64,000 nucleotides of DNA. It comes from Orbicella franksi. Taxonomy: Eukaryota. How positions within the stretch are numbered: position 1 is the first letter of the stretch; each line of letters starts with the position of its first letter. Below, piece after piece: positions 19,701 through 40,234 of the stretch. Under the pieces are notes generated by a model that saw nothing but the letters and a program-made list of their open reading frames with translations, ran no database searches and was not told the origin of the DNA. The translations under genes were made by a program, and so were the position numbers. The DNA lies in the NCBI GenBank assembly GCA_964199315.1, contig OZ116707.1:30752001-30816000 (forward strand). Direction: 5' to 3'.

Positions 19701-22700
19701 TTACAAAATGCAGTCCACGGTATCTAAGGGTCTGTTTGCTGGAGGGCAAAAGATAGCCCGGGTTTACAAGCAAAATTTCACAAGCAGAGTAACCTTACAA
19801 ACCGGGACAACTTGATGCACGGTTACACTCAAAGAGAGTGAAAACAATCAGAAAGTTAACCCGGGTAGGCGGGTTAACTCTACCTGGAGTGTTTGCAAGG
19901 GAAAAAGTTAACCCCCCCTGCCAGGGTAACCCGCTTACCCGGGTAACCCTAGCTGCCTTGTAAACACGACGAAGAAGAAAACAGGAAATGTGTGAGTGCT
20001 AGGGTAACCCTCTCTCCTTGAATACAGGCCCTAACAAGCCGTGTACTATGTTTACAGAAGACACTTACATCCACAGTAGCGTTGGTACTTGGTTCTTGCC
20101 CGCCCTCTGAAGCACTGACCTCCAAAGTGAACTTTGACCCATCCTTATCAGCCAACGAGGCTGCTACTCTCACGTGACCCGTATATGGCTCGACATGAAA
20201 CAGTCCCGCTCCATTACCACTGACGAGTTTATAGAATATGACTGAGTCAGAGCCATCATGACTGGCCTGGAAAAATGATGTTCACAATTTACATTCATGT
20301 TTCTCTAATGACATATGTAATAGCACATAAGGACCTAGACTTGCATATACAACTCCCCCAGATAATTTTTTAACCCAGTATCTCCCAGTATACGCGCAAA
20401 AAAAAAACAGAATGGTGGTAAGTACGTCGTCGAGTTGTAATGGCTATGTTATGTTGTCATAAAGTTTTGATTTGATTTGATTTGATAACCTGAGACAATA
20501 ACAACAAAACTAACCTTTACAGTTGTCACCAACGAATAATAAGTCGTTTCTTTGTACACTCCTGGTAAATAATAACACAAAATTGTGCAAGGTAAGAGTC
20601 TGTATCAACGGGAAGTTGCAAGGTATTTTTTACTTGTTTATTCATTTATTTACATATCTGATTAAACTTCGTTCTATCTTCACCGCCCTATGGTTTCCAG
20701 TCCTCTCGCGTGGCTGGTAATTGAGCTTAGCCTCAATGGTTTCCGGTTTTGTGGAAACAATGCTGTTAAATCATTTGTGACACAACGCCTTTCAATTCCA
20801 AAGAGCTTCATCCTCATAGCCGCTATGTACTGATCATCTTTTTGAACTTTTTCACTCAACTAGTTGAAAGAATGTGATAATCATATGTACAGGAAAACGT
20901 TTTCTGCGAGAGCAGCTGCTGTTTGCTTAGTTTTGATATCGATCAAATTAATCTTACCTGCTATGTACGATCGTGGCGAGAAAACATTGACAACAACGAA
21001 ACCAACATCATAGCGAGGATGAAGTCCATCGTCTTGTGCTTTTACTACAAGCTAAACAACAGATACTGATGAGTAAATATCACAGTAATGAAATAAGAAA
21101 ATCGTTATTTACCCACGGTGTCCATTTCACATTTCATATTGTACTCTTCTACAAATTTAAAGCCTGCAAATTACCAAGTAAATTATGATAGAAACTTATT
21201 CAACTGACAGGGTTATCTACAGCCACAGTGATAGCTGCCATGGGTAATATTTTAGCACAAAAAAATACTGTATTGCCAGAAGGGACCTCTCGAGAGAATT
21301 ACATGATTTTTGAAATACTGAGCTGTTCTACTGCCTCACGGCGATAACGAGTTTGAATAGAATAGTTTGCCAGTCTGCACAACATGAGCTATCCAAACTC
21401 GAGAACCATAATAAGGGAAAAGAAGAAGGATTCGAAGTCACCATGGCGAAATGAGAGATATTGAAGTCAACAATATGAAACAGTCTAGTTAAACATAATT
21501 TGGTTTAACAAGTAAAAAAAAAAAACATTCCTTCTGGTAGAATGATACAAGACTAATAGATCCCAAATGAGTCTAACGAATAATAAAAACACTCTGTCCC
21601 AATACCATGTATTCTTCAGGGTCAGCGTCATTGTCAAATGTCCCGGATGTGGTAATGACGCCTGTGACACTATCAATAGAGAACTTGTTGTCGGCGCCTT
21701 GAACAAGGTGATAAGTAACTTGCGCATTTCTGGCTGCATCGGCATCTGAGGCTTGACACCGAGCAACAAACGAACCAGAACCGGCACCCTGAAATAGAAC
21801 GTACGAAGATCTGATACGTTAAACCATTTATAGCGAATTAGTCATCTTTTAGGCTGTACTTCCTGTGACATTCTACCAAATAATACCAATAACACTAGAT
21901 TAATCCTTTCAACCTCGATGTAAAGTGTAAATTCTCCTTACTGTTGTAAGAGATTTCTTTGAAAGTCAGTTCTGAGAATTGAATGCTTTAAATTAAAACA
22001 ATTGTCCATGTTCTCCTCGCCCGTGTGCCTTGTAATATATTAATATTTTAAGCCGAACTAAACTATGATCAAAACAACTTGTTACCTCAAAAACAGAAGC
22101 TCGAATGATCCTCGCTTGAAGAGCTGGAGAGTTATCGTTAGCATCTATCACGTGAATCGTGACGTTACTAAATGCTTTGCGTGGAGGCTGTCCCATATCA
22201 GAAGCTGATATGTTGAGTGTATGCTGAACTGCAGACTCGTAATCAAGTGGTTTCACCAAAGATAACGCTCCGGTTTGGTTATTCAAAGCAAAGATTCCTG
22301 ATAAAGAACACAAATAAACAGACACGCTCGAGTTGCGTCCTTCTAAAACTGGTGCATTATGCATTTGACAGCAAAATGTATGCAGTAAGACCTATGATAA
22401 TTCAGCAGTTAATTAGAAAGATGATTTTAAAATATTGATCCGCGTAAAGTGGCTTCCTGACCAAAGCGCACTTTATAGCAGCAACAGCTTTTTTTTTTTC
22501 AATTCCTTTTTACTTTTTTTGGTGCTATGTCTTTCGACCGTGTGGGGGCAACCTAATCATAAGTGGTTGATATGTCCAATGGTCGATATGTTTACAAACA
22601 CACACACACAGACAAGGATGCACAGAAAAAAACAATTTTCATTTAAAGCAGTTTGAGAACTGCAAAGTATAACTGGTCAACGCGACTCTCAATAAGTGTG

Positions 22701-25700
22701 TCTATTGATAAGGAATAGGAAAAAAACAGCTGCTAGTCGCTGTTAAAAACAGCATCTGAAAGTCACACATACCTTGTTCATTGCCTGCTATAATCTCGTA
22801 CATCACTAAACCGTTCTGACCAGCATCTGGGTCACGTGCCGCTACTGTGAAAACAACAGTCCCTGGTGATGTGTCTTCTCCTACACTTACCGACACCTCG
22901 TTCTCGAATTTTGGAGTGTTATCGTTTGCGTCCAAAACTTTGATAATTATCTGAAGAATTAGAAAAAAGAGAAAAAGGATTCTCATCTTTTTACATTCAC
23001 ATGATACTAAGATGGAAGCTTTTCTTACATTCCGCATAAATATACCCTCCAACAACAAAGGCAACATCCAATTTTCGCCATCAAAAGCACACGGCAATAT
23101 CATGTCCAGAAATGCACGAAATTGACAGATTTGAGGAAATTTCGTCAAACTGAGTGAATGGAGTTCATGGATTTGACGATTTTGCCGAACTTTAGTCAAA
23201 TTTGTCAAAGCCAAATCAACTTGGCGTATTTGACGGTTTTGACGATTTTGTCACTTGGCTGTGGCCAGGAGCCCGTTTCTCGAAAGCCCCGGTTTCGGGC
23301 CCTAAAAGCCATTTTTAGTCAATCAGCATTTAAAGACATAGAGGTGTATACGCCTGAAACTTATTGTATGAGGGGAGCTCTGTTCGTAGTAAGAATACGT
23401 GGAAAAAACAGCTCTGTAGTCACAAGGTTTGAGATTTTGCTACGGCTTTTCGGGTGCGAAAACTTTTCGGGGCCTTCGAGAAACGGGCTGTGGCCAAAAA
23501 GGACTTAAAAAGGCATACTAGGGCAATGATTCGATTCTGTTTTTTTTTTTTGTTTGTTTGTTTTTTAATGTCACGCCAAGCTAGCAGACGGTAAAAAAAA
23601 GTCCCTCACCATTGCAAATCCTTTGTTTTTTCCATTGCTCAGTAACTCTACAACCAAGGTATACTGATACTGTTCTTCTCTGTCCAAAGCTTGAGGGCCG
23701 ACTTTGAGCTCTTTTGACGTTCCATTGATGAAAAACTTGTCACCCTCACCGCCTTGATGAATTTGGAATACAGGGTTTGATACATTGAAATATTGTTCCA
23801 GAGGCTACAAATAAAAAACACAAACAATGATGTTAAAGACATTTTACTTTACACGCGAAGCTGGTTTTTAATTCTTGAATAAAAGAGGAACTGACGTACC
23901 TTTAAGTCAAACACTGTTGTGTTAGCTTCGTTTTCCAGCACCACAGTCTCAAATGTTCGATTTGGCATTGCACCCACATTTATCATGACCAGAGCAAATG
24001 CAACAGGATGATTGGTTGATTTTGCCTGGGAGAAGAAATCAAATTACAATTTTAATTAAGAGGTAAGCACTCTGAGACTTATTCATTTCTTTAGAGACGT
24101 TTATACAAAACGGAATTTATTTGTCGGTAATGATTGTTCGTGCCAAACATGCATGTCTTTCTATGGTTTATTCCTGCACGAAAGGGAGAACACATGATGC
24201 ACTTTTCTAAAAGAGGGATCTATACTTGTCTCATTCCAACAAAACCAACTTTAAGCTATTTTCTTGACTAAGAATGGTAAGTAACGCAAGCACTCCATGC
24301 GTCCTGTCGCTATAGCTGATTCATCATATTGCTTGGACTACTTACCGTTACTATGATGGGATAGGAGTCTCGAGTAAGATTACTGTTTACTGTTATTGAG
24401 CCTGTTATGTTGTTGATCGTGAATAACTTGTCAGGATCACTCTCTGCAATATAACAAAGCAAACTCTGGTCTTCAAACATTCTGACCTAAAATGCTAGTC
24501 TTGCCAGGGGTCCTGTGGTTCTCCCTAGTAGAGGGTCTGGTTTGGGTAATCGGCTGTAATCACAGCTATATATCAGTCAAGTTTCAGCCATTTCCCAGAT
24601 TTAGAGAGTTTAAGCATGACGTTTACAGCAGACGGCAAACGGCAAAGATTACCTCTGAATTTGTGTTCTTTTCTTCTAGTCCTTTACTAAATCACACAAA
24701 AATAGAAAAATCGCCCCTACTATTCACCTCAAATACAAATATTTTCACGCTAACTGTATAGACAGCTGAAGACAGACGGCAAAAACTTCATTTTTGCCAT
24801 TTGACGTAACGTCATGCTTAATCTCTCTATTAGTAAATTCTTCAAACCTCTGATCTCAGTTGCCATTGGATAATGTTGCTAACACTTAAAACGGTTGACA
24901 AATTTTCAGTTAACAGTTACATTCAGCTCCCGTGCTGCTCCCGTGCAGTTCGGGACATGATGGTATCTCCTGCTAGCTTGGGATGTGAAAATCTGACATA
25001 TGGAGGATATTTTAAGCTCGGTAATGAAATGTGAAGGTGAATTAATCAACATGACACGAGCGTGGGACAAAGAAAAATTCTGAGTCCCCGACAGGAATCA
25101 AACCCATGACCTCCCGAACACTGGGCGGGCGCTCTATCCACTGAGCTACGAGAACTCATGGAGAGTAAGGTCATTTAGCTGAGTTCATATATGACAGGTG
25201 TCCTGCATACTGCTAGGATCAACGCTATCGAATTCATCGTGAGCAGTGATAAGTTAATAAAGATGGTGAATTTTAAGCTCGGTAATGAAATGTGAAGGTG
25301 AATTAATCAACATGACGCGAGCGTCATGGGAGGTCATGGGTTCGATTCCTGTCGGGGACTCAGAATTTTTTTTGTCCCACGCTCGTGTCATGTTGATTAA
25401 TTCACGTTCACATATGGAGGGCAGGTTTTAAGATGAATCCCTCTCCTTCCTCGCTATACTCATGTTACGCGGAGGTGTTTGTTTTTCTACGATATTGAAT
25501 TTCCTGAGCTGCTAGTCCAGGATTCCTTTCTCCTCATGCAGAATGCCAGTCAAAATACAGACCAATAAATACAAATTTCCCTTTTTGCCATGGTGACGCT
25601 TGCTAATTATGAGTGCATTTCGTAAACAAGAGGAAAAGTCATGTGATATAGTTGTGCATTATGATGTTGTCTACCNNNNNNNNNNNNNNNNNNNNNNNNN

Positions 25701-28700
25701 NNNNNNNNNNNNNNNNNNNNNNNNNNNNNNNNNNNNNNNNNNNNNNNNNNNNNNNNNNNNNNNNNNNNNNNNNNNNNNNNNNNNNNNNNNNNNNNNNNNN
25801 NNNNNNNNNNNNNNNNNNNNNNNNACCAACCTGGATATATTGCATAGGAGACTGGAGCCTCCACCGAGTCTTGGTCTTCAGCGAGCACTTTAACGATTTC
25901 ACGGCCCTTAGTTGTCAGAAGAAAAAAGGCGTTTCACAAAAACGAAATTATCATGAGAGTACCTGCATATCTAGAAAATACCAAGCGTTATCTGGGATTG
26001 CAGCTAACAAGGGGAAACTTTTCCACATATTTGTTACGTCGAGTGCCCGGGCAAGAATAAAGATATCGTGGCACATCAATGAAGTTATTTAATGTCTGTG
26101 TGAAAGACATGATCAGTACAGAGTTGGTTCTTGTGATATGTGTGAGTTGACAAAACCAAAAAGAAATTTAGGTTTTAGAATAACTAGACACTCTCCTTCC
26201 TTTTTTGGAATAACAGGTTACTCCGGTCCTGTTTGTTTTGAGTTCTTTTTACGCCATCTCCAGAAATAAAGCACGTGGGTGAGACAGAATTGTATTCGAG
26301 TACAAACCTATGTAGCTCATCAAGTCTTACAGTTGTGTTTAGTTAAATGATTTAAGTAAACAGCAATCCTTCTTACTTGTGGCGTATCGACTTCAATCAA
26401 CGCTTCATATAAATACTGAGAGAACTTTGGTGGAAGATCGTCAGCATCTAACAGTCCTATGGTCACCACTGTCCAGTTTTGGTTGCCCGTGGGTGCACCA
26501 TGTTCATCCTGCAGAAGATTAGGTCAAAGTATCAAGAGAAGAATTTTGTAAGGAATGACAAACCTCAAGATGATGGATGAGGTTAACTTTCCAGTATTCA
26601 GTCGTCAAATACAAATCTCTTATTGAATTAGATATTTATGAAAAGCACGGCACAACTTAAAAGAAGTCCGAACTGTGCTTAAGAATGCGAGTACGTCATT
26701 TTCAAGTCTGTCTGTATTGTAATCCATTGTAAACCAAAATAATTACAGGTATTCATCCTCACTTCTAAACGGCTTTCTGTTACTCGTCGAATATTGTTTT
26801 ACAGCGCACGGCTTTTTTATTTATACCTCAGGGGTGAGTGGAAGATAACAGTCAAGCAAAGACAGAAAGCTAGGTTAGACTATGCACCTAACGCAAGATA
26901 TGTTCTTACCGTTGCCGTTATATTAAGATAATAATACGAACTTGATCCCTCGAAATCAAGTGGCTTTTTCAAAGTTATCTTCCCACTTAGACCAGCAATT
27001 TCAAAAACTCCTTCCTGAAAATGAAATAAGTAAATAAACGCATTACCTACTGGTTCCATTCGCTGCCTTGCATAAAGAAACCGATATTTTAACGGTAGTC
27101 CACGATGGCATCCTCTCAATTTTTGTGTATTTCTTTAGCAGGTGGTATAGTTACTTTACCAACAGTAAAGAAGTTTGTAAACGGTTAACCTTGGAATCTT
27201 ACAAGTCTGATTAAAATTTAATTGCCTTTATGTTAATCTTCGGCGACTATCCGTCGGATGAAACCGTTTCAACGATGAAAGGAGATGATAGGCAGTTACA
27301 AAAAGAACGCTGTATTCAAAGGTGAGTTGAGCAACTGAACCAGTTTTCCTGTCCCCGTTAGTTTCACACTGAATGCAGTGGGATTAATTCCAAAAAGAAT
27401 GAACTTGAAAGTATGAAGAGGGTGCTTTAGTAGTAAAATTTAGTTTTACTAAGAAGCAGCCTATGAAATCGCTGGGAGAAATTGAAGAAATTATATGACA
27501 TGTCAGAATGCAACGTTAGAGATCATTGGACTAGAATAATTAAATCACGAGATACTGAAACACACAGTGTATTATCTTTCGCCCACTTACTTTGTCTCCT
27601 CCTGCGATTTTGAAGTACACTGTATTGTAATGATGATCTGAGCTGTCTTTATCAGAAGCTGATACCTGGAACACCACCTCGCCAACTTCTGTGTTCTGAT
27701 TTTAATAAAAGTTACAACACAAATGTAAAACAATAGTGGTGGCATGCAAGCCTGTCGTGCTAGTCTTGGGTAATACCTGCTGTGAGCAGTCTGTGAAGTG
27801 TGTCACGATTATAAGCTCTCTTGCTCGTATTGCCTGATAATCATTTACCAGCTCAATATAGAGTAGTGAAGTCCGTGAACAGAAACTCAGGTCCTATTTA
27901 TATGGTCTCGGTTACCCGACACAACCCTCCCCCGAGGCAACTTTATCGAGCGTTTATATATATGTGAAAACGTAGTCCCTGTAGGTTGATCCCGCATGAT
28001 TATTCATAACCCTTATTGATACGAATTTCTGCTTCAAATCCTAAACCTAGGCATTGCGTGATACTTGCCACACCGAGAGTTTTCCCGTTAGGCGAGCCAA
28101 ATTAAGTGTTTATATGAAGAAAAGTTGCCCCGCTTGCCAGAGTTACCCTACCTGCCGAGCCGAGACAACTCACCCACTCGAGTTGTCTCGCCCACGAGAC
28201 GGTTTCGCGATCCTCGTGTAAACGGTTTGCTGAATTTTGCAAAGAAATAAGCTAAAAGTTACCTTGGGCAGGTTAACTCGGGGGGAGGGTTGTCTCGGGT
28301 ACCGGAGGCCTCAAAGTGTCGCATTTGAGGATGAACATGTCAGAGGTGCTGGAGGAAGACAATTAGTTCCTGTACTGGTTAGCCAACAGCTCCTAAGTTA
28401 TTAATTGAAACTTCTCGACTCTGCTGGGATTGCTTTACATTTTTTGGACAACTCAGCAAATGTTTTCACTGACTGAAGTGTTTCCCTAGTTAACACTGTA
28501 AGTAATTGAAAGGTTGGTTTTTATTTCGTTTTTACCTCAGAAATGTTGACTTGATATGGCAAGTTTTCAAACTGTGGATAGTTATCATTCAAGTCCAGCA
28601 CAGTGCAAAAGATAATTTTTGTACCCTGTCGAAGAGAGCAAAGGAGAAATATTTAGAACAGTTGAAGCCTATGATGGCATTTTCTTCAGATGGTGGCATA

Positions 28701-29566
28701 GTTCTTCTAAATGTGCTCTCGAAACAGCTCAACAAATTGCAGCATTCACTTTACTGTGCAAGGAGAATTCCGGCAACTAATCCGGCATAGTCAACGGAAC
28801 ATGATTTTTAGCCCGTGCTCAGATCCTGAAAACGATGAAATAAATGGCCGGATAAACCAGGAAATGAAACGAGAATGTACGTCCCTTGCCCTAAAAAAGT
28901 ACATTAAAATTAATTTCAGAAATGCCTCTAACCTTATTAGATTCGTCGCTTTTAGAAGCAACCACGTCAAACCGAATCGACGACGACGTTCCCTGAAAAA
29001 ATATATATATAATTTAGGGTTTAAACAAGACGAGAAAACACCGTGTTTTAGTCAGTGCTTCTGCGATCAACTAAAGGATCAATTAACTGACCGTGCGCAG
29101 ATGGACGGAATTTACTCTGAATGCTTGTTTGTTAAAATCACCAACGTTTTGGGTGAACCGAACAAGCCCTGAAACGGTTTTAACAATTTCAACGCTTGTT
29201 CGGATTGAAAAGCTCTATGATGATAGTGTTTGATTACCTCTCTGTCCAAAGTTCTTGCAACAGTAATAACGCCAGTCGTGCTGTTTATTTCAAACCATCC
29301 TTTGTCATTTGTAAGGGAATAAGTGATTTGAGCCCCAGTATTTGTCACGGCCACAGCTTGCACACTTGCAATGAACGTTCCTGAGGAAGAACGATGTGGA
29401 AACTTATCAATCACAGGCATGATAGCTCTTAATACGCGCTATGAGTTGGGAAAACGGTTGACATGCGATGTTCGGAAGGGTTCAGAGCAATCAGTGGTTC
29501 AGTGAACATCAGTTGGGAAATAACAGTGCCTTTTCTCTATATATTTAGATTTCTCTGCCTTAACAT

Positions 29567-29615
<49 letters not shown>

Positions 29616-32600
29616 CATTGTTTATTATATATATATATATAATAAACAATGGTAGCAAGACTTCAATTCATCGTTTATTGCGACAACGCTGTTTCGTATG
29701 GTCAAAGGATGACCACACTCATCAGGCAATATCAACGAATGACCGTTAAATTTCACAAACTGGCAATTAAAAGCTAACTTTAGGTTGCTATGAGATATAA
29801 AAACAGTTGCTATGATATGGAAAAACAGATGCTATATAACATTGAAAAATCTCGTGTTGCTAAAAGATTGCGTTACTTGCTCACAAAGTTCTTGAGTAGG
29901 TATCTGTTTCTGTGGGGGCACGCACTTGCTAGTTCGTTTCGCTTGTTCAAAGTACACAAACTCTTCTTACAGATGATCACGAATTTTTCAAAAAGACATA
30001 AATTACATTTGTTAGTAATGTTGCTATAAGGTCTGCACTGCTTAATGATTCTCCACTTGATGGTAAAAGGTTTGTTGTTGTCTTTGAGTGTCCAAATATG
30101 TTTAGATAGCTCAGTTTCGTTTCTCTTGTTTTGGTGTCGAAAGGATGCTGTGTGATTCCTGTAGCGCTCTTTAAAATTTGTGGCGAGGCCCACGTATGAT
30201 TCTGATGACGTTTGTGTTGTGATTGTGGCTTGGTAAACTACATTTTGTGTGAGGCATTTTCCGTCCAGCGGGCATTGATCCTTTTTTCTGCAGTTGCATT
30301 CTTTGGCGTTTGTTTGTGTTTGCGACTGGTGGTAATCTGATAGTAGTGCTTTGTTGTGTGACGAGATGATACTCTTCATGTTAGGCATGCAGGAGTAGCT
30401 GAGCTTCAGTGTGTGCTTGTTGAAGATCTTGTGTAGGGGGTGTCCGTTAGGGAAGCATCTGTCAATGATGTTTAGGAACTTCCTTCCCAGGTTAGTTTTC
30501 ACGTTAGCATTCCATGGGGGGTTGTACCATACGATTTTTCTTTGGCGATTTCTGTTGCGCTTTGGCTGTGGTTTATACGTGAGCTTGTGATTGTAGCCGC
30601 TCTCGTCAAGCGCTTTCTGGTACGGCGGAATCGCTTCGTCGAAAACTTTCTGGCTAGATGAGATGCTGGTCAGTCGTTTGTTGATGTTTTCTGGAATGTT
30701 CTTCAGTAGTGCGGGTGGGTGATTACTTTGTCGGTGAACGTAGAGGATTTTGTTGTTGGGTTTCATGAAGGGTTTGTAAGATCCACTTGTAAGGTCTAGG
30801 GTTACGTCTAGGAAGTTTATAGTTTTTTTGTTTGCTTTGATGGTGATTTTGAGGCCATTTGACTTGAAAATTTCACTGACTTCTTGTTTCGTTTTCGTTT
30901 TCGTTTTAGAAGAAATTTTCAAGTCAAATGGCCTCAAAATCACCATCAAAGCAAACAAAAAAACTATAAACTTCCTAGACGTAACCCTAGACCTTACAAG
31001 TGGATCTTACAAACCCTTCATGAAACCCAACAACAAAATCCTCTACGTTCACCGACAAAGTAATCACCCACCCGCACTACTGAAGAACATTCCAGAAAAC
31101 ATCAACAAACGACTGACCAGCATCTCATCTAGCCAGAAAGTTTTCGACGAAGCGATTCCGCCGTACCAGAAAGCGCTTGACGAGAGCGGCTACAATCACA
31201 AGCTCACGTATAAACCACAGCCAAAGCGCAACAGAAATCGCCAAAGAAAAATCGTATGGTACAACCCCCCATGGAATGCTAACGTGAAAACTAACCTGGG
31301 AAGGAAGTTCCTAAACATCATTGACAGATGCTTCCCTAACGGACACCCCCTACACAAGATCTTCAACAAGCACACACTGAAGCTCAGCTACTCCTGCATG
31401 CCTAACATGAAGAGTATCATCTCGTCACACAACAAAGCACTACTATCAGATTACCACCAGTCGCAAACACAAACAAACGCCAAAGAATGCAACTGCAGAA
31501 AAAAGGATCAATGCCCGCTGGACGGAAAATGCCTCACACAAAATGTAGTTTACCAAGCCACAATCACAACACAAACGTCATCAGAATCATACGTGGGCCT
31601 CGCCACAAATTTTAAAGAGCGCTACAGGAATCACACAGCATCCTTTCGACACCAAAACAAGAGAAACGAAACTGAGCTATCTAAACATATTTGGACACTC
31701 AAAGACAACAACAAACCTTTTACCATCAAGTGGAGAATCATTAAGCAGTGCAGACCTTATAGCAACATTACTAACAAATGTAATTTATGTCTTTTTGAAA
31801 AATTCGTGATCATCTGTAAGAAGAGTTTGTGTACTTTGAACAAGCGAAACGAACTAGCAAGTGCGTGCCCCCACAGAAACAGATACCTACTCAAGAACTT
31901 TGTGAGCAAGTAACGCAATCTTTTAGCAACACGAGATTTTTCAATGTTATATAGCATCTGTTTTTCCATATCATAGCAACTGTTTTTATATCTCATAGCA
32001 ACCTAAAGTTAGCTTTTAATTGCCAGTTTGTGAAATTTAACGGTCATTCGTTGATATTGCCTGATGAGTGTGGTCATCCTTTGACCATACGAAACAGCGT
32101 TGTCGCAATAAACGATGAATTGAAGTCTTGCTACCATTGTTTATTATCTACACTGCTCCTCTCAGAGTCGAGCGCTCTATAAATTTATTCTGTTCAAGTT
32201 CAAGAAGTATATATATAGTTAGTTATATATATATATATCAGTATATAACAATGAAGATGACGACGAAAACGTTGTGTCAATCGTCTGTCATTTAACTATG
32301 CAAAGTTTAGAGGCACTCGTTGACAATCATGGCCCTCTAATTTGGATGTGAGTTATTTAACTGACTTTCTTTTAGCGATCCGGCAAATTAACAAAACAAC
32401 GAAAATGGCCACAGTTTGCGGTTGTTAAGTGAGAGATCCATAAAGAGAAAAATCGCCGGTTTGCTGACTTTTTGGTAGAAGCGGTCCTAAAATCACAACT
32501 CAGTCGACGAAAGAAGAACACGTTTCCAAGACTCAAGGGCAAATTTTGAAAACGGGTGCCTAAATTTTTCTATTTGTGATCAAAATTTCGCGCTTGTGCT

Positions 32601-34517
32601 TCCGTAACTCATGATAGCAACCCTTTGGTAGCTTGCGAGGACTAGAATTAGTAATTTTTAACACTGAATCTTTTAGGTTTCTTCAGTTTGATGTAAATAT
32701 CATTGTATTTTCGCCATGTTGACGATAGAGACCCTCTGCTCAAGGTTACTGTGCTTTATACCAAAAGTCCTTTTGATGTTTTTTCAGTTTCCTTACCAGG
32801 AGGACTAGACTCATTCACTCTTGGCTCCAGCGGTAAATTTGGGCTTGGAAAGTAAACACCTGCCAAAAAAAAAGAACAAATTCTACAGACGCGGCGCACA
32901 CTCCATAATTAGATATTTAGTTGACTCCCGCTAGCCTTTATATTAAAGGAAATAAAGAAAGATTCAAAATTATCTCGGGAGATAATAGGGAATAATTCGG
33001 TATGTGTTTCAATCAGGTTTATTTCAGAGAAACACGAAAACTGGGGCGATACTTTGCTAATATAGAGACAGATCTGAAAGGAATAAAACAAATCAAAAGA
33101 AGACAGCAGAATTAGAATAGCTATATAGTTTGGTGGGTTACTGCAGTACATAGTTGTAAAGAGGTACTTTGTTGTAGAAACAGTTAATTACAAGACAGTA
33201 ATTTTGGGGAACTTTGTCTGATTAACTTTTGACTAATGTGGCTCGAATTATGATCGTATTTTACCCCGTACATAATTTAAAAATTAATTAACTAATAATA
33301 GTATTAATAGTTCTCTTAGAAACCGAATCACAGTATCCAACCTGAACTGAACTTTATGTAATTTGAACTAATGTAAAAATTATACACTCTCGGCCAGGGT
33401 GATCACAGACGGTTTCAGGTAATTTTTGGTCTTACTGTGGCTTGTAGTCTAACACTGTATTTAGAATAACTTGGAGGAAAGAAGAGTGGGTGTAATCATC
33501 AACCAATTGACACGTTTTAAAATAACATTACTTGCAGTCAGAACATCCAAGCGACTTGTTAATTTTTTTTTTTTTTTTTTCACATAAACAGATAGTGAAC
33601 TTTCAAATTAGTTTAACAAAAGTTTCCCCCCTTGTCTTAACACAGAACCGAACTGATCTTTCCAACCAGGTCCTGGTTAACTGATCTACAGGCAAGACTT
33701 GAGAAGCTACAGCCAGGATAAATTTTAAATAATAACTGCTGACACTCCGTTCAAGCATTGGACTGTAAAGTTGAATTATTAGCACAAAAATGCATGGTTG
33801 TTCTCGAAATCAATCCCTTCAGTCTCCTACGAAACAAAAATCTCAAAATGTTGGAGGACATTGGAAAACTATACACTTTTTCCATCCACCACCGACCACT
33901 CCGTGAAAATATAATATGTAAGTGGAAAATATGAACTTACAAGGAAATACTGGAATTTTCTAACCCGCAGGAAGTCAATTACCTCGAGGGATGCAAATAA
34001 TAAAACAAAACATGTCGAAGTGAAGGCTAAAAGACAATTTAAGGATTAAGATCTCGTAATTCAATCAATGAACAGAATACAATGTCAATTAAAGCCTGTG
34101 AAGGCACTACCAAAGTTTGGCATATCTGATGTCTTCTGCAGTGGTTTATGTTTGATGATCTTTCTGAAGTGTATACAAACTATATAAACCTAACATATGC
34201 TGATTAATTACCGCAATCCATAGAAGGGATATAGCATATAGAGCAGTCGCGGTTTGTACTGTTACGAGATAACATCAGTAAGAGTACAATCCATAAAGGT
34301 AACTTTGGCTCAATGTTTTTGTGTTCTCTACTCGGAATGCAAAGAAAGGAATTCGCGATACGCACTTACTCAGTGTTGTATTCAGTACTTGGAGACCAGA
34401 GCACATACATGGGCACACATACCCAGAATACATAAGGAATTTATTTGATTTACTTAACTTACCTTCGATCACGCCAGGCTTGAAAGCCGCCAATAAAAAC
34501 ATTAACTGAATTAGCAT
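15100..34517 (-). CDS. CDH23/CDHR2-like cadherin: signal peptide, 7 EC repeats, membrane-adjacent domain, TM, cytoplasmic tail; ~1075 aa
   Basis: 25 GT-AG exons joining in frame (5'->3'): 34517-34463, 32859-32797, 29380-29238, 28992-28933, 28625-28536, 27695-27591, 27014-26910, 26508-26377, 25906-25831, 24443-24346, 24025-23900, 23804-23610, 22950-22773, 22297-22086, 21788-21606, 21051-20958, 20561-20515, 20266-20069, 19464-19376, 19154-19086, 18729-18667, 18317-18117, 17504-17430, 16882-16807, 15594-15100 (3228 nt). LDRE/LDFE/LDYE and DxNDNxP motifs; MAD-like VFVLRDKDSILIK...FLRMLETISG...TVVTFHVVK...DNKELL; TM LSAVVGAMICLGVIIGVGAIIMIIILI; ends EDTTEL*. Confidence 0.92.
16641..16714. repeat. 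(AAT)n microsatellite
   Basis: Seen directly. Confidence 0.95.
19728..20031. mobile_element. PIF/Harbinger-type (Tourist-like) MITE
   Basis: Termini GGGTCTGTTT / ATACAGGCCC flanked by TAA on both sides; internal GGGTAACCC palindromic motifs. Confidence 0.7.
23271..23488. mobile_element. MITE with ~20-bp TIRs
   Basis: GCCCGTTTCTCGAAAGCCCC ... GGGGCCTTCGAGAAACGGGC. Confidence 0.75.
24602..24829. mobile_element. MITE with 20-bp TIRs
   Basis: TAGAGAGTTTAAGCATGACG ... CGTCATGCTTAATCTCTCTA (19/20 match). Confidence 0.8.
25007..25409. mobile_element. tRNA-derived SINE-like element, partially tandem-duplicated with an inverted copy
   Basis: Minus strand has A box TAGCTCAGTGG and B box GGTTTGATTCC; ~46-bp segment repeated directly (~25010 and ~25271); inverted partial copy ~25326-25405; ACATATGGAGG direct repeats at 24996-25006 and 25410-25420. 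Confidence 0.75.
25676..25824. other. Assembly gap (149 N)
   Basis: Run of N in cadherin intron 9. Confidence 1.
27890..28310. mobile_element. Harbinger-like MITE
   Basis: Subterminal inverted repeats TTACCCGACACAACCCTCCCCCGAG / CTCGGGGGGAGGGTTGTCTCGGGTAC; TCA on both flanks. Confidence 0.6.
29570..29611. repeat. (TA)n microsatellite at the left edge of the Penelope-like insertion
   Basis: Seen directly; TA-rich tract also at 32207-32246. Confidence 0.95.
29639..30900 (-). mobile_element. 5'-truncated Penelope-like retroelement (end of RT, thumb, GIY-YIG endonuclease, 3' UTR); left arm of palindrome
   Basis: Open frame KQEVSEIFKSNG...INFLDVTL...YVHRQSNHP...CNCRKKDQCPLDGKC...VVYQA...YVGLAT...KW...CNLCLFEK, stop at 29873. 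Confidence 0.93.
29676..29731 (-). ncRNA. Type I hammerhead ribozyme (left arm)
   Basis: Exact reverse complement of 32055-32110. Confidence 0.85.
30912..32206 (+). mobile_element. 5'-truncated Penelope-like retroelement; right arm of palindrome, extending ~60 bp further 3'
   Basis: Mirror of the left arm (position x maps to 61786-x); same translation to the stop at 31913; followed by a TA-rich tract. Confidence 0.93.
32055..32110 (+). ncRNA. Type I hammerhead ribozyme (right arm)
   Basis: TATTGC-CTGATGA-GTGTGGTCA(TCCTT)TGACCATAC-GAAACAGCGTTGTC-GCAATA: stem I, CUGAUGA core, 9-bp stem II, GAAA, short stem III, GUC cleavage triplet. Confidence 0.88.
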
Positions 34518-37500
34518 GGCTTGTGGAGTTTAGTTTGGTAGAGTTCAATCGTGCTTCCTTGGATCGTCGCCGGTAAAAGTTCAATCGTCTTCCTGAGCCG
34601 CTGCGAGAAACGTGTGCATGTACGAAGCCAGATTTTACATGACCTCTATTGCTTCGAAGAACGCTAACAATGCAGACTACAGCTTCGTCTCAGAACGGGT
34701 CTGTTGTCTTAATCAACACGCGATCGCCTCGATTCCATCATCCCAAGCACTCATGTATCGCTAACAAGCAGTGAAATTTATTCGATTTTAATTTCAATTT
34801 TTGTTTTCCCACACCAAAAAGATTATGCAAATCTTGGCAGTTCTGCATGAGCGAGAGCTTGATTACATTGCATTTGCATAAAATGTAGCATCAATAGATC
34901 TCTAGGGTAACCTGATCATGAGTGGGTGGATCTGGGATTTCATTGGCTCGTTTAGAGCCGCTGACGTGACCTGTGTTCATTAGGTCAGATGTGAACCTCG
35001 TCCAAAGCAAGTTTCTTTTCGAGAATATTAACGGAAATATAATTTCTTTGTCCTTAATTGTTTTCTCATTTCTCTTATTTCATTACTTTCACTTCTTTGA
35101 GTAACCGAGTCATGCATTGGAAATGAGTTTTGATGCAATTAGAAGGTCGGCGTTCAGAGCTTCTTCAGAAAGAGGTTTTCACGCGATCGTGCAATCAGTC
35201 TTACCTTATTTTGTCGGTCACTTATGGAAAGAGATCTTCACAACCCTAGGCCAGGCTGTGTCAGGAGTAGGTATCTAAATCTAGTAGACAAGCACTTGTC
35301 CTCTTCAACTGGAGTGAATTTAATCATCGATTATTCAAGATTGGTTATACAACAGACAGCCGCATTTTGTCAGCTGTATAAAATTGCTCAGTGTGTGGAC
35401 ACCAGAGTCTCCGATGACAAATAATAACTAGTTCAATAACTCAGCACCTTTTTAAGTTATTGGTTATAATCTCCAGTGTTTCATGTATGTCTGGCATTCT
35501 ATTAATGTTTCAGAGAGGAATTATAAGAAATTTTAACTTCTTAATCGAGTTAGAGGACAGTGGATTTGTTGGCGAATTTTTAAGAACATTGCTACACAGT
35601 TCTTTTTATATTTTCTATAAACAGGTTTCTTCCACCGACACTAATAAAAAGAACCAACCCGTGAGCACCAAAGTTGGCAGAGAAATTGCCTGAAGACGCT
35701 GTTTACAAGGCTTGAAAGTTAAACAAAATTAGAAGAACCTAACGGTTTCGACTACTTAAGTCATCTTCACAAATACTTTTCGGTTTCCATTGAGCTAAAC
35801 ATGCACCAACACGTTTAAACAAGACACAATGGTCGGTATTTGCTTTTTGTCTAACCTCTGTCAAGTCAAGCGTAAATGTCGTGGGAAGATGAAGGTTGGG
35901 TCGAAATAGAGCCAGCGGTTGTCGTTAGCGCTTTTGCTTTATATAACGTTACATGAAGTATTCTCGCGGTCAAAAACTCAGTAGCCAAAACCGCATGTTG
36001 CAATACAATTATTTGTACCGGCCTGCCCAGCAGCAGAGTCCAGATCTAGGGAAGCATCTAAAGACTACAGGATATTAGAATTTTAAAAACGGCTAAAGGA
36101 ACTGAAATATTGTGCTTGTAAACAAGCCAAAATTCCCTTCAAAAACAGCGAGGCGATAGAAAGATTGAACATGGTGGGCGTTTGCTTAGTTGACAGGGAG
36201 CTGATTGTATGACATGATATTGTAAATTTGGCGCCATAGAATATCAAGGTGTGCTTTTTTTTTAAGCCAATCTTTGCTGGTAATGTACAGTGGTTGTGTA
36301 CATTGCTAAATATAGTTAAGTATCACCAAAACAAGGAAAGTGCAGCAATCAAACATGGCGCATAAGGTACTCAAAAGCGCACGAAAAATTGAAACCCTCT
36401 GTCTAATGTGATAATATAGTCTTTCTAACAATCTTTGAGTCACTGATAGTGGTCAAACTAACTGTCTTGAGTAATAGCAATCAGCAGCATACAAGCTGAG
36501 CTGGTATAAGGAATGTTTTGCCATTTTTCTGGGCACAATTGGTGGGTTAATGCTCACAATCTTACTTATGAAATGCTTTGGAAATAAAAACCGACTTAAA
36601 TTATCTGTAATCTCAAACTTAACTATCTGATGCTCAAATCATTCAAATTAAATAGGACATCCTGAGACGCGTGGTGCTGTAATTACTATCGAGACTATGG
36701 AGGTAAATCAAAAGCGTTTAATCGAATCAGCGTGATGCGGGAAAACCAAACCATCTCTGACGGGCGGAACATTTTCACTTCATAATCTATTCGCAACCAG
36801 TCATACATGATTCTTTCATAGACAATACTTGTCTTTTTATTCCTTATGTGATCGAATAAATGAACTCATCGCCATTGATCCTCTTGCAGAGGTTTTAGCT
36901 CATCTGTAAGCATATTGCACCAAAACATCATAAGTTTGCATCACAGTAATGAATACTTGAATTTTCTTTCATGATTTTTTGGCGCAATTGCTTTAATTAT
37001 AAACACAATTGCGCTCAACATTTCTTTACCTTGTTTTTCAGGAAAATTATTATCAACGTTTTCTATTCCTGCCAAACAGCCAGACGGCTTTAATACTGTT
37101 GTTTATTGTTGATTGCTGCCATGAAATTATGGTTGATGATTGTTGTCATGGAGTTTCATCCCTTTAACGATAAAATACATGCCTTGCGCTATGATATGAT
37201 ATTTTTAGTCTTTTTTGTTAAAGAAAGATGATTCGTACCGCCCATCGAATGGACGGGAAGCAAACCCAAATACAACCAGTCAAAATACAACTCATTTAAG
37301 TACACGTTGCAGAACTATATCTGTTTTAGGAAACTTTTCACGCCAACTCTTTGGCCCCGAGCGTCAACGGAACACATTAACGCCAAACCAGTGTTTGATA
37401 AGAGATTCATGATTTTGTGAGGACTATCTATAGCAATTTTTATCTGAAAATCCCTGCAATCTGATTGACCCTTTAGAAAAGTGTTTTCAGGATTGAAATC

Positions 37501-38998: not shown

Positions 38999-40234
38999 CT
39001 ACACTTTCTCGTGGGCCGCGGTTCCATCATTAATTTTAGCTTGTAGTTTCTCGGCGGAATTCCTTGATGACGACTTCGAACTTTTTTTGGAGCTGGAGCT
39101 AGAGCTTCTTCTCCTACTGAGTAAGAAGGAACTTCTTTTTCCGTCTTTGTCGCGCCTGTTGAGTGAAGAAGAGGTTCGTCGAAATGTGTTCAAGCTAAGT
39201 CCTTCCGTGGTATCCGCACAGCAACCGTCGGTGTCACATCGCAGAAGTTGCACGAAGTCACGGCGAAAGTCTGAGTTCACTACAGAGTAGATTATTGGAT
39301 TAGCAGAAGCGTTTGTTACCAGTAAAAGAACAAAGATACGAGCAGCGATTGCAACGTGTTTGGAACCGGTAATGTGGACAAAAAGAGACATGATGGTGGT
39401 CAAATGCGAGGGCGCCATGCAGACAGCAAACACAATAACAACTGGGGCAAGAAGTCTCAAGGCTCGGCGATTTTGTACAATCCTGGAAACAGACTCCTTT
39501 CGAGCAGTTTGTTCTCTGAAGCTCGAGCGCCGGTAGCTGTCGTGTCTGCGAATGCTGTCCTTCAGCTTCGTTCTGATGCGAATGTATGTTACCGCGATAA
39601 TACTCAAAGGAATGATGTAAAAAGCCAAGACAATCGTAGTATGGTACATCTGGCTGGACAACGGGTTAGGCCACAGTGGTTCGCAGATCACTATCCCGAT
39701 TTTTGGTATGGGTAGCAACTTCATGACGAAAAACAATGGCATTACCACAATAATGAAGGATAGAAGCCAGATGAGGAACAGGACGCGTTTGACTGTTTGT
39801 TTGTTCATTTGCGGCTTCATGCAATGCACCAGCATTCTGTAGCGATGAAGTGCAATGGCTGTGATGCAGCCGATTCCTACCCCGTAAAAGATTAAAGTGA
39901 AAGGGAAGACAGTTTCGCAAACGAACTCACCAAACGGCCACGAGATAGAGAATTCTTTGCTGATATGAATCGGATAGTTAATGAGTAACACTCCCAAATC
40001 GGCGATGGCGAGATTGAGAATTAAACGATTGCCGACTATCTTCAAGTTTCTTTTTTTCGATGTAACAACACACACGAGAACATTTCCGACAGTTCCTATA
40101 AGGGAAACAATTATTTGCAGCACAAGTATGATGATTCTTGCTGTATCATATTGCCGCGGTAAGTGTGTAATTCGCGAAGAGTTTGTGGAGTTTCCAAGAA
40201 TCGGCGTTGCTGAACTTGTGCCGTTTAACAGCAT
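38999..40234 (-). CDS. Class A (rhodopsin-like) GPCR, neuropeptide-receptor-like, 411 aa, intronless CDS
   Basis: First ATG at 40234 (track start 40273 is TTG). Seven hydrophobic segments; GN (TM1), LAIAD (TM2), WPFG..VC, HRY, NPIIY; N-glycosylation sequons in the N-terminus. Confidence 0.93.
   Translation of the reverse strand: MLLNGTSSATPILGNSTNSSRITHLPRQYDTARIIILVLQIIVSLIGTVGNVLVCVVTSKKRNLKIVGNRLILNLAIADLGVLLINYPIHISKEFSISWPFGEFVCETVFPFTLIFYGVGIGCITAIALHRYRMLVHCMKPQMNKQTVKRVLFLIWLLSFIIVVMPLFFVMKLLPIPKIGIVICEPLWPNPLSSQMYHTTIVLAFYIIPLSIIAVTYIRIRTKLKDSIRRHDSYRRSSFREQTARKESVSRIVQNRRALRLLAPVVIVFAVCMAPSHLTTIMSLFVHITGSKHVAIAARIFVLLLVTNASANPIIYSVVNSDFRRDFVQLLRCDTDGCCADTTEGLSLNTFRRTSSSLNRRDKDGKRSSFLLSRRRSSSSSSKKSSKSSSRNSAEKLQAKINDGTAAHEKV

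What the first reader, a model, noticed from the sequence alone, without database searches (positions are those of the whole stretch)
29639..32147. 2.5-kb head-to-head Penelope palindrome inside cadherin intron 2
Seen: 1236-bp arms (29639-30874 and 30912-32147) around a 37-bp spacer, with identical translations and no mismatch in the stretches I compared. Flanking host exons stay collinear and in phase. Known: PLEs form inverted, 5'-truncated insertions; CxCx5C, KW, CxLC and TA targeting match my recollection of the Hydra clade. Inference: a very recent insertion that makes every host pre-mRNA fold into ~1.2 kb of dsRNA, a built-in source of anti-PLE siRNA or ADAR substrate and a cruciform-prone site.
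Basis: partly seen in the sequence, partly recalled or inferred. Interest (0 to 1): 0.75.

Follow-up and report, generated by a model that had tools for sequence, protein, structure and literature searches.

The report
Twin head-to-head Penelope retrotransposon insertion
This is a real, very young, dead-on-arrival double insertion of a coral Penelope-like retrotransposon, two truncated copies laid down head-to-head in a (TA)n microsatellite beside a cadherin exon; it is the usual insertion form of this transposon family, and no regulatory role is shown.

Summary
Arms 29639-30874 and 30912-32147 are 1236 nt with no mismatch, around a 37-nt spacer.

The arms are 5'-truncated 3' halves of a ~2.4-kb Penelope-like element of the Hydra clade. 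A full copy shows RWK, DKT, CxCx5C, CxxC and CxH motifs, no CCHH, a hammerhead core and a (TA)n target.

Each arm holds element sequence the other lacks: 22 nt at 30875-30896 on the left and a 60-nt "tail" at 32148-32207 on the right. A fold-back assembly artefact is therefore unlikely.

The structure is the family's norm. About two thirds of the 100 listed 3' termini (of 129 in the genome) sit in such pairs. All 29 pairs inspected carry exactly one tail.

This fits published work that a PLE enzyme cuts and extends both target strands and starts reverse transcription at two sites that bound the tail. The best reading is one insertion event primed from both strands.

Not shown:
- The intron number. 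Only the downstream cadherin exon was verified.
- The centre junction in independent reads.
- Any transcription, dsRNA, siRNA or editing. One polyA RNA run gave zero reads.

Earlier follow-ups of this scan judged two other palindromes from Penelope-like elements in this genome to be ordinary transposon scars. I agree.

The parts
29571..29612 (.). Left remnant of the (TA)n target microsatellite
   Evidence: Sequence. The same family is flanked by (TA)n at nearly all loci.
29613..29628 (+). 16-nt copy of the element's 3' terminus (TACCATTGTTTATTAT), inverted relative to the left arm. With the 10-nt (AT)5 at 29629-29638 and the first 16 nt of the left arm it forms a perfect 42-nt palindrome, 29613-29654.
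   Evidence: It is the only such case among 34 short-end termini examined.
29639..30896 (-). Left arm: a 5'-truncated PLE copy with its sense strand on the minus strand, the same strand as the host gene. It ends outward at the 'short' 3' end ...TTATTAT, without a tail. 29639-30874 is the perfect repeat. 30875-30896 is 22 nt more of genuine element sequence that the right arm lacks.
   Evidence: reference positions 1182-2442; family contigs follow the window up to 30896. Searches give the protein context ...EKTKQEVSEIFKSNGL.
30897..30911 (.). 15-nt filler at the head-to-head junction: two extra copies of the hexamer CGTTTT, then AGAA. This looks like polymerase stutter or template switching.
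   Evidence: The junction is unique in the genome.
30912..32147 (+). Right arm: a 5'-truncated PLE copy covering reference positions 1204 to the short end. Its ORF remnant 30912-31913 encodes the last 333 aa (linker CxCx5C plus GIY-YIG endonuclease), followed by the 3' UTR.
32148..32207 (+). 60-nt PLE 'tail' (CTACACTGCTCC...CAAGAAG), present on the right arm only. In tandem or full-length copies the same sequence lies between the 3' end of one unit and the 5' UTR of the next.
32208..32247 (.). Right remnant of the (TA)n target, interrupted
32047..32119 (+). Minimal type-I hammerhead motif in the 3' UTR of the right arm. CUGAUGAG lies at 32061-32068 and CGAAAC at 32090-32095, with a 9-bp helix II and a 2-bp helix III. 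Cleavage is predicted after GUC at 32104.
   Evidence: Rfam models do not score it.
29667..29739 (-). Mirror copy of the hammerhead motif in the left arm, sense to the host pre-mRNA. Predicted cleavage lies between 29682 and 29681.
   Evidence: Mirror of the right arm.
29238..29380 (-). Host cadherin exon (GTFIASVQ...ITYSL...LDRE), preceded by a polypyrimidine tract and CAG and followed by GTAATC. It is the most 5' exon with detectable cadherin homology.
   Evidence: (2619 cadherin hits).

Best explanation
The 2.6-kb block 29613-32207 is one insertion event of a young Hydra-clade Penelope-like element (PLE) into a (TA)n microsatellite. It lies 232 nt upstream of a cadherin exon, most likely in a 5' intron.

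Proposed mechanism:
1. The element's GIY-YIG endonuclease cut both strands of the self-complementary (TA)n target.
2. Each 3'-OH primed reverse transcription of RNA from the same source copy, possibly the same RNA molecule. One started at the inner start site (...UUAUUAU) and the other 60 nt further 3', which produces the one-sided tail.
3. The two cDNAs grew towards each other and stopped within 22 nt of each other, about halfway along the element (reference positions 1182 and 1204).
4. They were joined 3' end to 3' end with a short stuttered filler.

The result is two outward-facing 3' halves with no RT domain and no intact ORF start, so the copy is dead on arrival.

Shown: the identity and anatomy of the parts, the recurrence of the architecture, and the one-tail rule. 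Inferred: the order of events, use of one RNA, and how the two cDNAs were joined.

No host function is indicated. The capacity of a read-through transcript to form a 1.2-kb duplex is a physical property, not a demonstrated activity.
For: Identity of the element:
- A near-full copy (L032) is 2442 nt with one 707-aa ORF carrying RWK, DKT, YRDD, CxCx5C, GIY...YIG, CxxC and CxH, and no CCHH. These are the diagnostic features listed for the Hydra clade in PMC8557442 section 11.
- Pfam GIY-YIG scores E=3e-4.
- More than 2400 homologues of about 700 aa occur in corals, a bivalve and a bryozoan.

One event, not two:
- The arms differ at 0 of 1236 sites, whereas the closest other copies differ at 2-11 sites.
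- The arms' inner ends lie 22 nt apart.

A family-wide architecture:
- There are 129 3' termini in the genome. Of the 100 listed, about 64 form 32 (-,+) head-to-head pairs, and only one (+,-) neighbour pair is seen.
- Seven further long pairs have arms called 100% identical.
- 29 of 29 pairs inspected have exactly one tail. L042 is scored by eye because of a 4-nt insertion. The chance is about 2e-9 if the two ends chose start sites independently.

Mechanistic precedent:
- A purified Poseidon-clade PLE protein cleaves and extends both target strands.
- It starts reverse transcription at two adjacent internal sites that bound the genomic 'tail', and it is predicted to dimerise (PMC11167929).
- Inverted 5'-truncated copies and one-sided tails are described as typical of PLEs (PMC8557442).

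Joining of the two cDNAs:
- In five sibling loci an arm ends exactly at the predicted hammerhead cleavage site. In four of them both arms do, overlapping by the self-complementary dinucleotide GC.
- This is what run-off cDNAs annealed 3' end to 3' end would give.

Not an artefact:
- Each arm has private, genuine element sequence, and the two flanks are different unique DNA.
Against: - No read or contig spanning the centre or the left flank-arm junction was obtained. Short-read contigs stop at (TA)n, and no run was listed for the centre junction.
- The in vitro study saw no strand bias in start-site choice, so the strict one-tail rule needs an extra assumption, such as a dimer on one RNA.
- Neither the tailed nor the untailed arm is consistently the longer one across pairs. 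A simple leading/trailing model on one RNA is therefore not established.
- Clade membership rests on motifs, not on a phylogeny with reference Hydra families.
Confidence: 0.72

Rival explanations
1. Snap-back origin. A single cDNA folded back on itself at its 3' end and primed its own second strand, giving a hairpin that was fixed as a palindrome.
For: The arms are nearly equal in length, with only a 15-37-nt centre. Many sibling pairs also have near-equal arms.
Against: - A fold-back copy would also copy the tail and the primer-side flank, yet 29 of 29 pairs have one tail only.
- Here the untailed arm is the longer one, so it cannot be a copy of the tailed arm.
- Other pairs have very unequal arms, for example reference positions 1297 against 2110 and 2232 against 2396. 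In the second of these the short arm starts exactly at the hammerhead cleavage site, which implies a separate RNA template.
- (CTAT)n stutter at short ends looks like initiation slippage.
Confidence: 0.1
2. Assembly artefact. A fold-back or chimeric long read produced a false inverted duplication of a single truncated copy.
For: The centre junction was not found in any indexed public run. Short-read contigs cannot bridge the arms. PMC8557442 notes that such structures trouble assemblies.
Against: - The left arm has 22 nt of genuine element sequence that the right arm lacks, and the right arm has a 60-nt tail that the left arm lacks.
- The flanks are different single-copy sequences, not mirror images.
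- The structure obeys the one-tail rule of 28 other loci.
- Hairpins of 84-240 bp from the same family are short enough to sit inside single reads. One such joined form appears in an independent short-read contig (joint 29738>32046).
Confidence: 0.05
3. Two independent insertions of the same family into the same (TA)n tract at different times, in opposite orientation.
For: (TA)n is a hot target. Nested or complex loci exist, for example contig C3 at about 26.66 Mb, which has three termini.
Against: - The arms show 0 differences in 1236 nt, against 2-11 between copies at different loci.
- The inner ends lie within 22 nt of each other, out of about 2400 possible positions.
- Orientation is almost always (-,+), with exactly one tail per pair.
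Confidence: 0.03
4. A functional reading, the first reader's. The intronic palindrome is transcribed with the cadherin pre-mRNA, folds into about 1.2 kb of dsRNA, and feeds Dicer or ADAR. It would give siRNAs against the PLE family and/or lower cadherin output.
For: The host-sense transcript across 29600-32220 has a predicted MFE of -2403 kcal/mol, with 1236 pairs across the centre. The left arm is sense to the host gene. Metatranscriptome contigs of six runs hold 63-67% of the sampled words of the 5.5-kb stretch, but these were not inspected.
Against: - A polyA RNA-seq run of the species laid no read on the 6-kb stretch, exons included.
- No small-RNA or editing data were available.
- At least 32 sibling palindromes exist, so any such effect is a generic by-product of the family rather than a feature of this locus.
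- The arms carry no A-to-G type differences, though this is uninformative at the DNA level.
Confidence: 0.1

Closest known systems
Hydra clade of C-terminal-endonuclease Penelope-like elements (Craig et al. 2021, PMC8557442), reported from Hydra, Nematostella, Acropora millepora and other aquatic invertebrates
   Same: The unit is under 3 kb with a single ORF. It has RWK and DKT motifs, a CxCx5C linker, a GIY-YIG endonuclease without CCHH, and CxxC and CxH around the conserved E and N. It has a hammerhead core in the UTR and inserts into (TA)n.
   Different: Placement rests on motifs only. No tree with the Repbase Hydra families was built. Rfam hammerhead models do not score the ribozyme motif.
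Generic PLE insertion architecture: inverted 5'-truncated copies, pseudo-LTRs and a one-sided 30-40-bp tail (Evgen'ev & Arkhipova 2005; Arkhipova 2006, as summarised in PMC8557442)
   Same: Head-to-head 5'-truncated copies with a tail at one end only.
   Different: The tail is 60 nt here rather than 30-40. In this family the head-to-head form is the majority form, and the one-tail rule held in all 29 pairs inspected.
PAc (Poseidon, Anolis) in vitro TPRT (Frangieh et al. 2024, PMC11167929)
   Same: Two alternative 3' ends separated by the tail match two RT start sites. The need for priming on both strands matches the observed cleavage and extension of both strands.
   Different: PAc belongs to another clade and cuts at ATT. 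In vitro, no strand preference for start site was seen and HHR-cleaved RNA was not detected. In this coral family each pair uses each start site once, and some arms end exactly at the hammerhead cleavage site.
L1 twin priming (Ostertag & Kazazian 2001; from my own knowledge)
   Same: Both DNA ends at the target prime cDNA synthesis, giving inverted segments.
   Different: Twin priming yields non-overlapping, inverted parts of one copy. Here both arms contain the same 3' half, so the insertion is a duplicated palindrome.
Hairpin-RNA (hpRNA) endo-siRNA loci formed by inverted TE copies in flies, mice and plants (from my own knowledge)
   Same: A long perfect inverted repeat that could be transcribed as one RNA.
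   Different: No transcription or small RNAs are shown. The repeat is an insertion by-product, not a conserved locus.

Membership tests
Penelope-like element, Hydra clade | C-terminal GIY-YIG endonuclease | tested here: met
   Pfam PF01541 scores E=3.2e-4 at 21.4 bits, just under the 22.6 cut-off. The VVYQA...YVGLA...R...E...N pattern is visible.
Penelope-like element, Hydra clade | N-terminal RWK motif, and DKG changed to DKT | tested here: met
   HRMRWKAFF and VKADKTTNHY occur in the 707-aa ORF of L032.
Penelope-like element, Hydra clade | Linker Zn-finger modified to CxCx5C; CCHH absent from the endonuclease; CxxC and CxH flanking the conserved E and N | tested here: met
   CNCRKKDQC is present. 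There is no Cys or His pair between the GIY and YIG blocks. CNLC..FE and N..CPH are present. All were checked by inspection.
Penelope-like element, Hydra clade | Short element (under 3 kb) with a single ORF | tested here: met
   The unit is about 2.44 kb with one 707-aa ORF.
Penelope-like element, Hydra clade | Insertion into (TA)n | tested here: met
   The window's flanks and about 60 termini at other loci.
Penelope-like element, Hydra clade | Canonical hammerhead ribozyme motif | tested here: inconclusive
   - The full core is present: CUGAUGA, a 9-bp helix II, GAAA, and a GUC cleavage triplet.
- It is conserved in a subfamily with 75% DNA identity, where the cleavage triplet is GUA.
- The helix III loop changes from AGCGUU to AGGUCU and stays self-complementary.
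- No Rfam model scores it, even at E<=10.
- Cleavage was not assayed.
Penelope-like element, Hydra clade | RT groups with reference Hydra families in a phylogeny | not tested
   No reference (Repbase) sequences were available. Homologues found are unnamed.
PLE complex insertion (inverted 5'-truncated copy plus one-sided tail) | An adjacent inverted 5'-truncated copy, with a tail at one end only | tested here: met
hpRNA / endo-siRNA or ADAR-substrate locus | The inverted repeat is transcribed as one RNA | tested here: inconclusive
   The polyA RNA run X21 laid 0 reads on 28520-34519. The tool marks this as no test unless the organism is shown to be in the run.
hpRNA / endo-siRNA or ADAR-substrate locus | 20-24-nt small RNAs or clustered A-to-I changes map to the arms | not testable with these tools
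   No small-RNA libraries were available.
Fold-back assembly artefact | The two halves, flanks included, are mirror images with no private sequence | tested here: not met
   There are 22 private nt in the left arm and a 60-nt private tail on the right arm, and the flanks are distinct and unique.

The most novel reading that the evidence does not exclude
The palindromes of this coral PLE family, including this one, may be a genomic record of how PLEs integrate.

- A dimeric RNP sits on one RNA with one subunit at each of the two RT start sites. Each subunit primes from one strand of the self-complementary (TA)n target, which would explain exactly one tail per pair.
- Both cDNAs run to the same RNA 5' end and anneal 3' end to 3' end.
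- Arms ending exactly at the predicted hammerhead cleavage site would then be in vivo evidence that the ribozyme processes PLE template RNA.

The published in vitro and RNA-seq work on another PLE did not detect such processing.
Probability: 0.35. Interest if true: 0.55.

Novelty: new member of a known kind. Interest (0 to 1): 0.3.

Why it matters
For the host gene it probably matters little. This is a young, non-autonomous transposon scar in non-coding DNA, one of dozens of the same shape in the genome.

Its value is as a clean specimen. The arms are perfect, the tail is on one side, the centre is stuttered, and a small terminal palindrome sits at one end.

Together with its siblings it offers sequence-level constraints on the still poorly understood PLE integration pathway:
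- priming from both target strands;
- use of two start sites;
- joining of cDNA to cDNA;

If the cadherin is expressed in some tissue, the locus could also serve as a test case for whether cnidarians process intronic TE hairpins into small RNAs.

Tried and rejected
- Rfam at E<=1 over 28500-33500 gave only microRNA-family hits centred on the palindrome centre (30818-30968). These reflect the perfect hairpin, not miRNA genes, and I rejected them. A rerun at E<=10 over 131 nt found no hammerhead model.
- Pfam found no RT family for the 707-aa ORF at E<=0.1. RT identity rests on motifs and on homologues that carry PF26215, one of them also PF00078.
- A whole-library protein search with the cadherin exon returned giant cadherins and one 102-aa ORF call, but no orthologous gene model. 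Exons 1-2 could not be mapped.
- Read laying gave little. DNA contigs stop at (TA)n and collapse the repeat. The only joint (29738>32046) comes from roughly 200-bp sibling hairpins elsewhere. The RNA run gave no reads.
- The search for runs holding the centre junction listed none.
- The search for a second haplotype copy of either flank in the assembly found none.
- Metagenome contigs L064 and L065 cover the left flank at about 99% identity. L064 ends in (TA)n. L065 leaves (TA)n into a different repeat, which is either another allele or a chimeric join, so it is not usable as an empty-site test. These contigs also span the window's masked N run; I did not read or use those letters.
- The TATAAA in the tail is not conserved in the subfamily with 75% DNA identity, so I dropped the idea that it acts as a promoter.
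A natural copy (L032:4411-6852) served as the coordinate reference.

Full report
**Observation.** The repeat finder reports an inverted repeat with arms 29636-30874 and 30912-32150 and 37 nt between them. A base-by-base check shows one mismatch, at 32148/29638. Both arms encode the same 333-aa ORF remnant. The centre junction occurs once in the 497-Mb assembly, and both flanks are single-copy.

**What the arms are.**
- The arm protein ends in a GIY-YIG endonuclease (Pfam E=3e-4, just below the cut-off).
- The genome holds many near-identical copies.
- A near-full copy, L032:4411-6852, is 2442 nt with one 707-aa ORF.
- That ORF carries RWK, DKT instead of DKG, a YRDD box, a CxCx5C linker, no CCHH in the endonuclease, and CxxC and CxH around the conserved E and N.
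- These are the features that Craig et al. 2021 list for the Hydra clade of Penelope-like elements, together with small size and insertion into (TA)n (PMC8557442 section 11). That clade is reported from the coral Acropora millepora.
- More than 2400 homologues of about 700 aa exist in public data, named ones coming from a coral, a bivalve and a bryozoan.
- Notes from this scan describe the genome as a reef coral.
- Membership rests on motifs. I built no tree with reference families.

**Anatomy in the window.**
1. (TA)n lies at 29571-29612.
2. A 16-nt copy of the element's 3' terminus follows at 29613-29628, then 10 nt of AT.
3. The left arm has its sense strand on the minus strand. It ends outward at ...TTATTAT (29639).
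4. Inward, the left arm runs 22 nt beyond the perfect repeat, to 30896. Those 22 nt are genuine element sequence: family contigs follow the window to 30896, and BLAST to the reference copy gives positions 1182-2442.
5. Positions 30897-30911 are filler made of two extra CGTTTT hexamers plus AGAA.
6. The right arm (30912-32147, reference positions 1204 onward) continues into a 60-nt tail, 32148-32207.
7. An interrupted (TA)n follows.
8. In full-length or tandem copies the tail sequence lies between the 3' end of one unit and the 5' UTR of the next.

**Hammerhead motif.**
- Each arm carries a minimal type-I hammerhead core in its 3' UTR: CUGAUGAG, a 9-bp helix II, CGAAAC, a 2-bp helix III and GUC, with cleavage predicted after 32104.
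- The core is conserved in a subfamily with 75% DNA identity, where the cleavage triplet is GUA and the helix III loop changes but stays self-complementary.
- Rfam models do not score the motif.
- Rfam's microRNA hits at the centre only reflect the perfect hairpin.

**The structure is the family's norm.**
- A 31-nt terminus pattern occurs 129 times in the genome, against 0 for the reversed control.
- Of the 100 places listed, about 64 form 32 (-,+) pairs within 7 kb. Only one (+,-) neighbour pair is seen (counted by hand).
- Further long pairs have arms of 620 to over 2258 nt, called 100% identical.
- Across loci the element has two alternative 3' ends. One stops at ...TTATTAT and the other is 60 nt longer, the tail. 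Both abut (TA)n.
- In all 29 pairs I could inspect, exactly one arm has the tail. L042 was scored by eye because its tail has a 4-nt insertion.
- If the ends chose independently, the chance of that result is about 2e-9.
- The window's pair obeys the rule.

**One event.**
- The arms differ at 0 of 1236 sites, while the closest other copies differ at 2-11 sites over 700-1240 nt.
- Arms of some other pairs have diverged. Arms are therefore not kept identical indefinitely, and zero differences indicates youth.
- The arms' inner ends are 22 nt apart.

**Mechanism.**
- Frangieh et al. 2024 showed that a purified PLE protein cleaves and extends both target strands. It starts reverse transcription at two adjacent internal sites that bound the genomic tail, and it is predicted to dimerise (PMC11167929).
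- Craig et al. describe inverted 5'-truncated copies and one-sided tails as typical of PLEs.
- The simplest reading is target-primed reverse transcription from both strands of the self-complementary (TA)n. One strand uses each start site, on RNA from one source, and the two cDNA 3' ends are then joined.
- Sibling loci support the joining step. In four 84-86-bp hairpins both arms end exactly at the predicted hammerhead cleavage site and overlap by the palindromic GC. In a fifth locus one arm ends there.
- Another cluster of arm ends lies at reference positions 2337-2345, the 5' foot of hammerhead helix I. I cannot explain it.
- The strict one-tail rule is not predicted by the in vitro work, which saw no strand bias. 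A dimer on one RNA is my inference.

**Artefact?**
- Each arm holds genuine element sequence the other lacks, the flanks are different unique DNA, and the locus obeys the family rule. A fold-back artefact is therefore unlikely.
- Read-level proof is missing. Short-read contigs stop at (TA)n. The junction of the tail's last 20 nt with the right flank is seen in runs X1 and X6. No run was listed for the centre junction, from only three sampled words.

**Host context.**
- Cadherin-homologous exons lie on the minus strand from 20030 to 29435.
- The nearest exon is 29238-29380, preceded by a polypyrimidine tract and CAG and followed by GTAATC. Its protein matches 2619 cadherins.
- The exon starts mid-domain with a split codon, so coding exons must lie upstream, beyond the insertion. 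None is detectable by homology, and the polyA RNA run gave no reads.
- 'Intron 2' and 'in phase' therefore remain unverified.

**Function.**
- A host-sense transcript across the block would fold with 1236 pairs (MFE -2403 kcal/mol).
- That is potential only. I have no evidence of transcription, small RNAs or editing.
- In such a duplex the sense hammerhead in the left arm would be sequestered by its antisense partner.
- With at least 32 sibling palindromes, any dsRNA effect would be a generic by-product of the family.

**Verdict.** This is a confirmed, well-described specimen of a known kind. Two earlier follow-ups in this scan reached the same view for two other Penelope-like-element palindromes in this genome.

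Noticed in passing
L037:151-234, L038:151-236, L039:1462-1547, L040:151-236; right arm of L041:153-391: These are 84-86-bp perfect hairpins of the same family. Both arms end exactly at the predicted hammerhead cleavage site (GUC|GCAAU) and overlap by the self-complementary GC. This looks like run-off cDNA on ribozyme-cleaved RNA, and so like possible in vivo evidence of PLE hammerhead activity.
   Followed up: partly
L042-L052 (about 200-bp hairpins); reference positions 2337-2345 of L032:4411-6852: At least nine independent pairs have both arms ending within 8 nt of the 5' foot of hammerhead helix I, at the A of TCATTC. This suggests a discrete RNA 5' end or an RT stop. The cause is unknown.
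   Followed up: partly
window 29613-29654: A perfect 42-nt palindrome sits at the outer end of the left arm: a 16-nt inverted terminus, (AT)5, and the terminus itself. It is unique among 34 short-end termini examined.
   Followed up: partly
L013, L015, L019, L020, L028/L036 termini: (CTAT)n or (CT)n runs lie between the short 3' end and (TA)n. They are consistent with repeated slippage at initiation by a telomerase-related RT.
   Followed up: no
L065:4596-4707; flanks in L007/L031, L039, L044/L045, L048: A second repeat (GGCAGAATAATATGGTTTTCCAAACGG...) abuts (TA)n at several loci. In metagenome contig L065 it follows the same (TA)n as the window's left flank. This is either another allele or a chimeric join.
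   Followed up: no
window 38999-40273 (-): An intact 424-aa single-exon ORF that looks like a rhodopsin-type GPCR, upstream of the cadherin on the same strand.
   Followed up: no
L055-L058 versus window 32030-32215 (alignment A1): A subfamily with 75% DNA identity keeps the hammerhead core and the tail/short-end dichotomy. Its helix III loop changes from AGCGUU to AGGUCU yet stays self-complementary, which fits ribozyme dimerisation.
   Followed up: partly
loci with a break at query position 1028 of the arm; L039:154-911, L054:153-627: A subfamily carries a 100-125-bp A-rich insertion in the 3' UTR.
   Followed up: no
runs X15-X20: Six coral metatranscriptome runs hold 63-67% of the sampled words of the mostly intronic stretch 28000-33500. 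This could mean unspliced RNA, transcripts of other family copies, or DNA carry-over. It could not be inspected.
   Followed up: no
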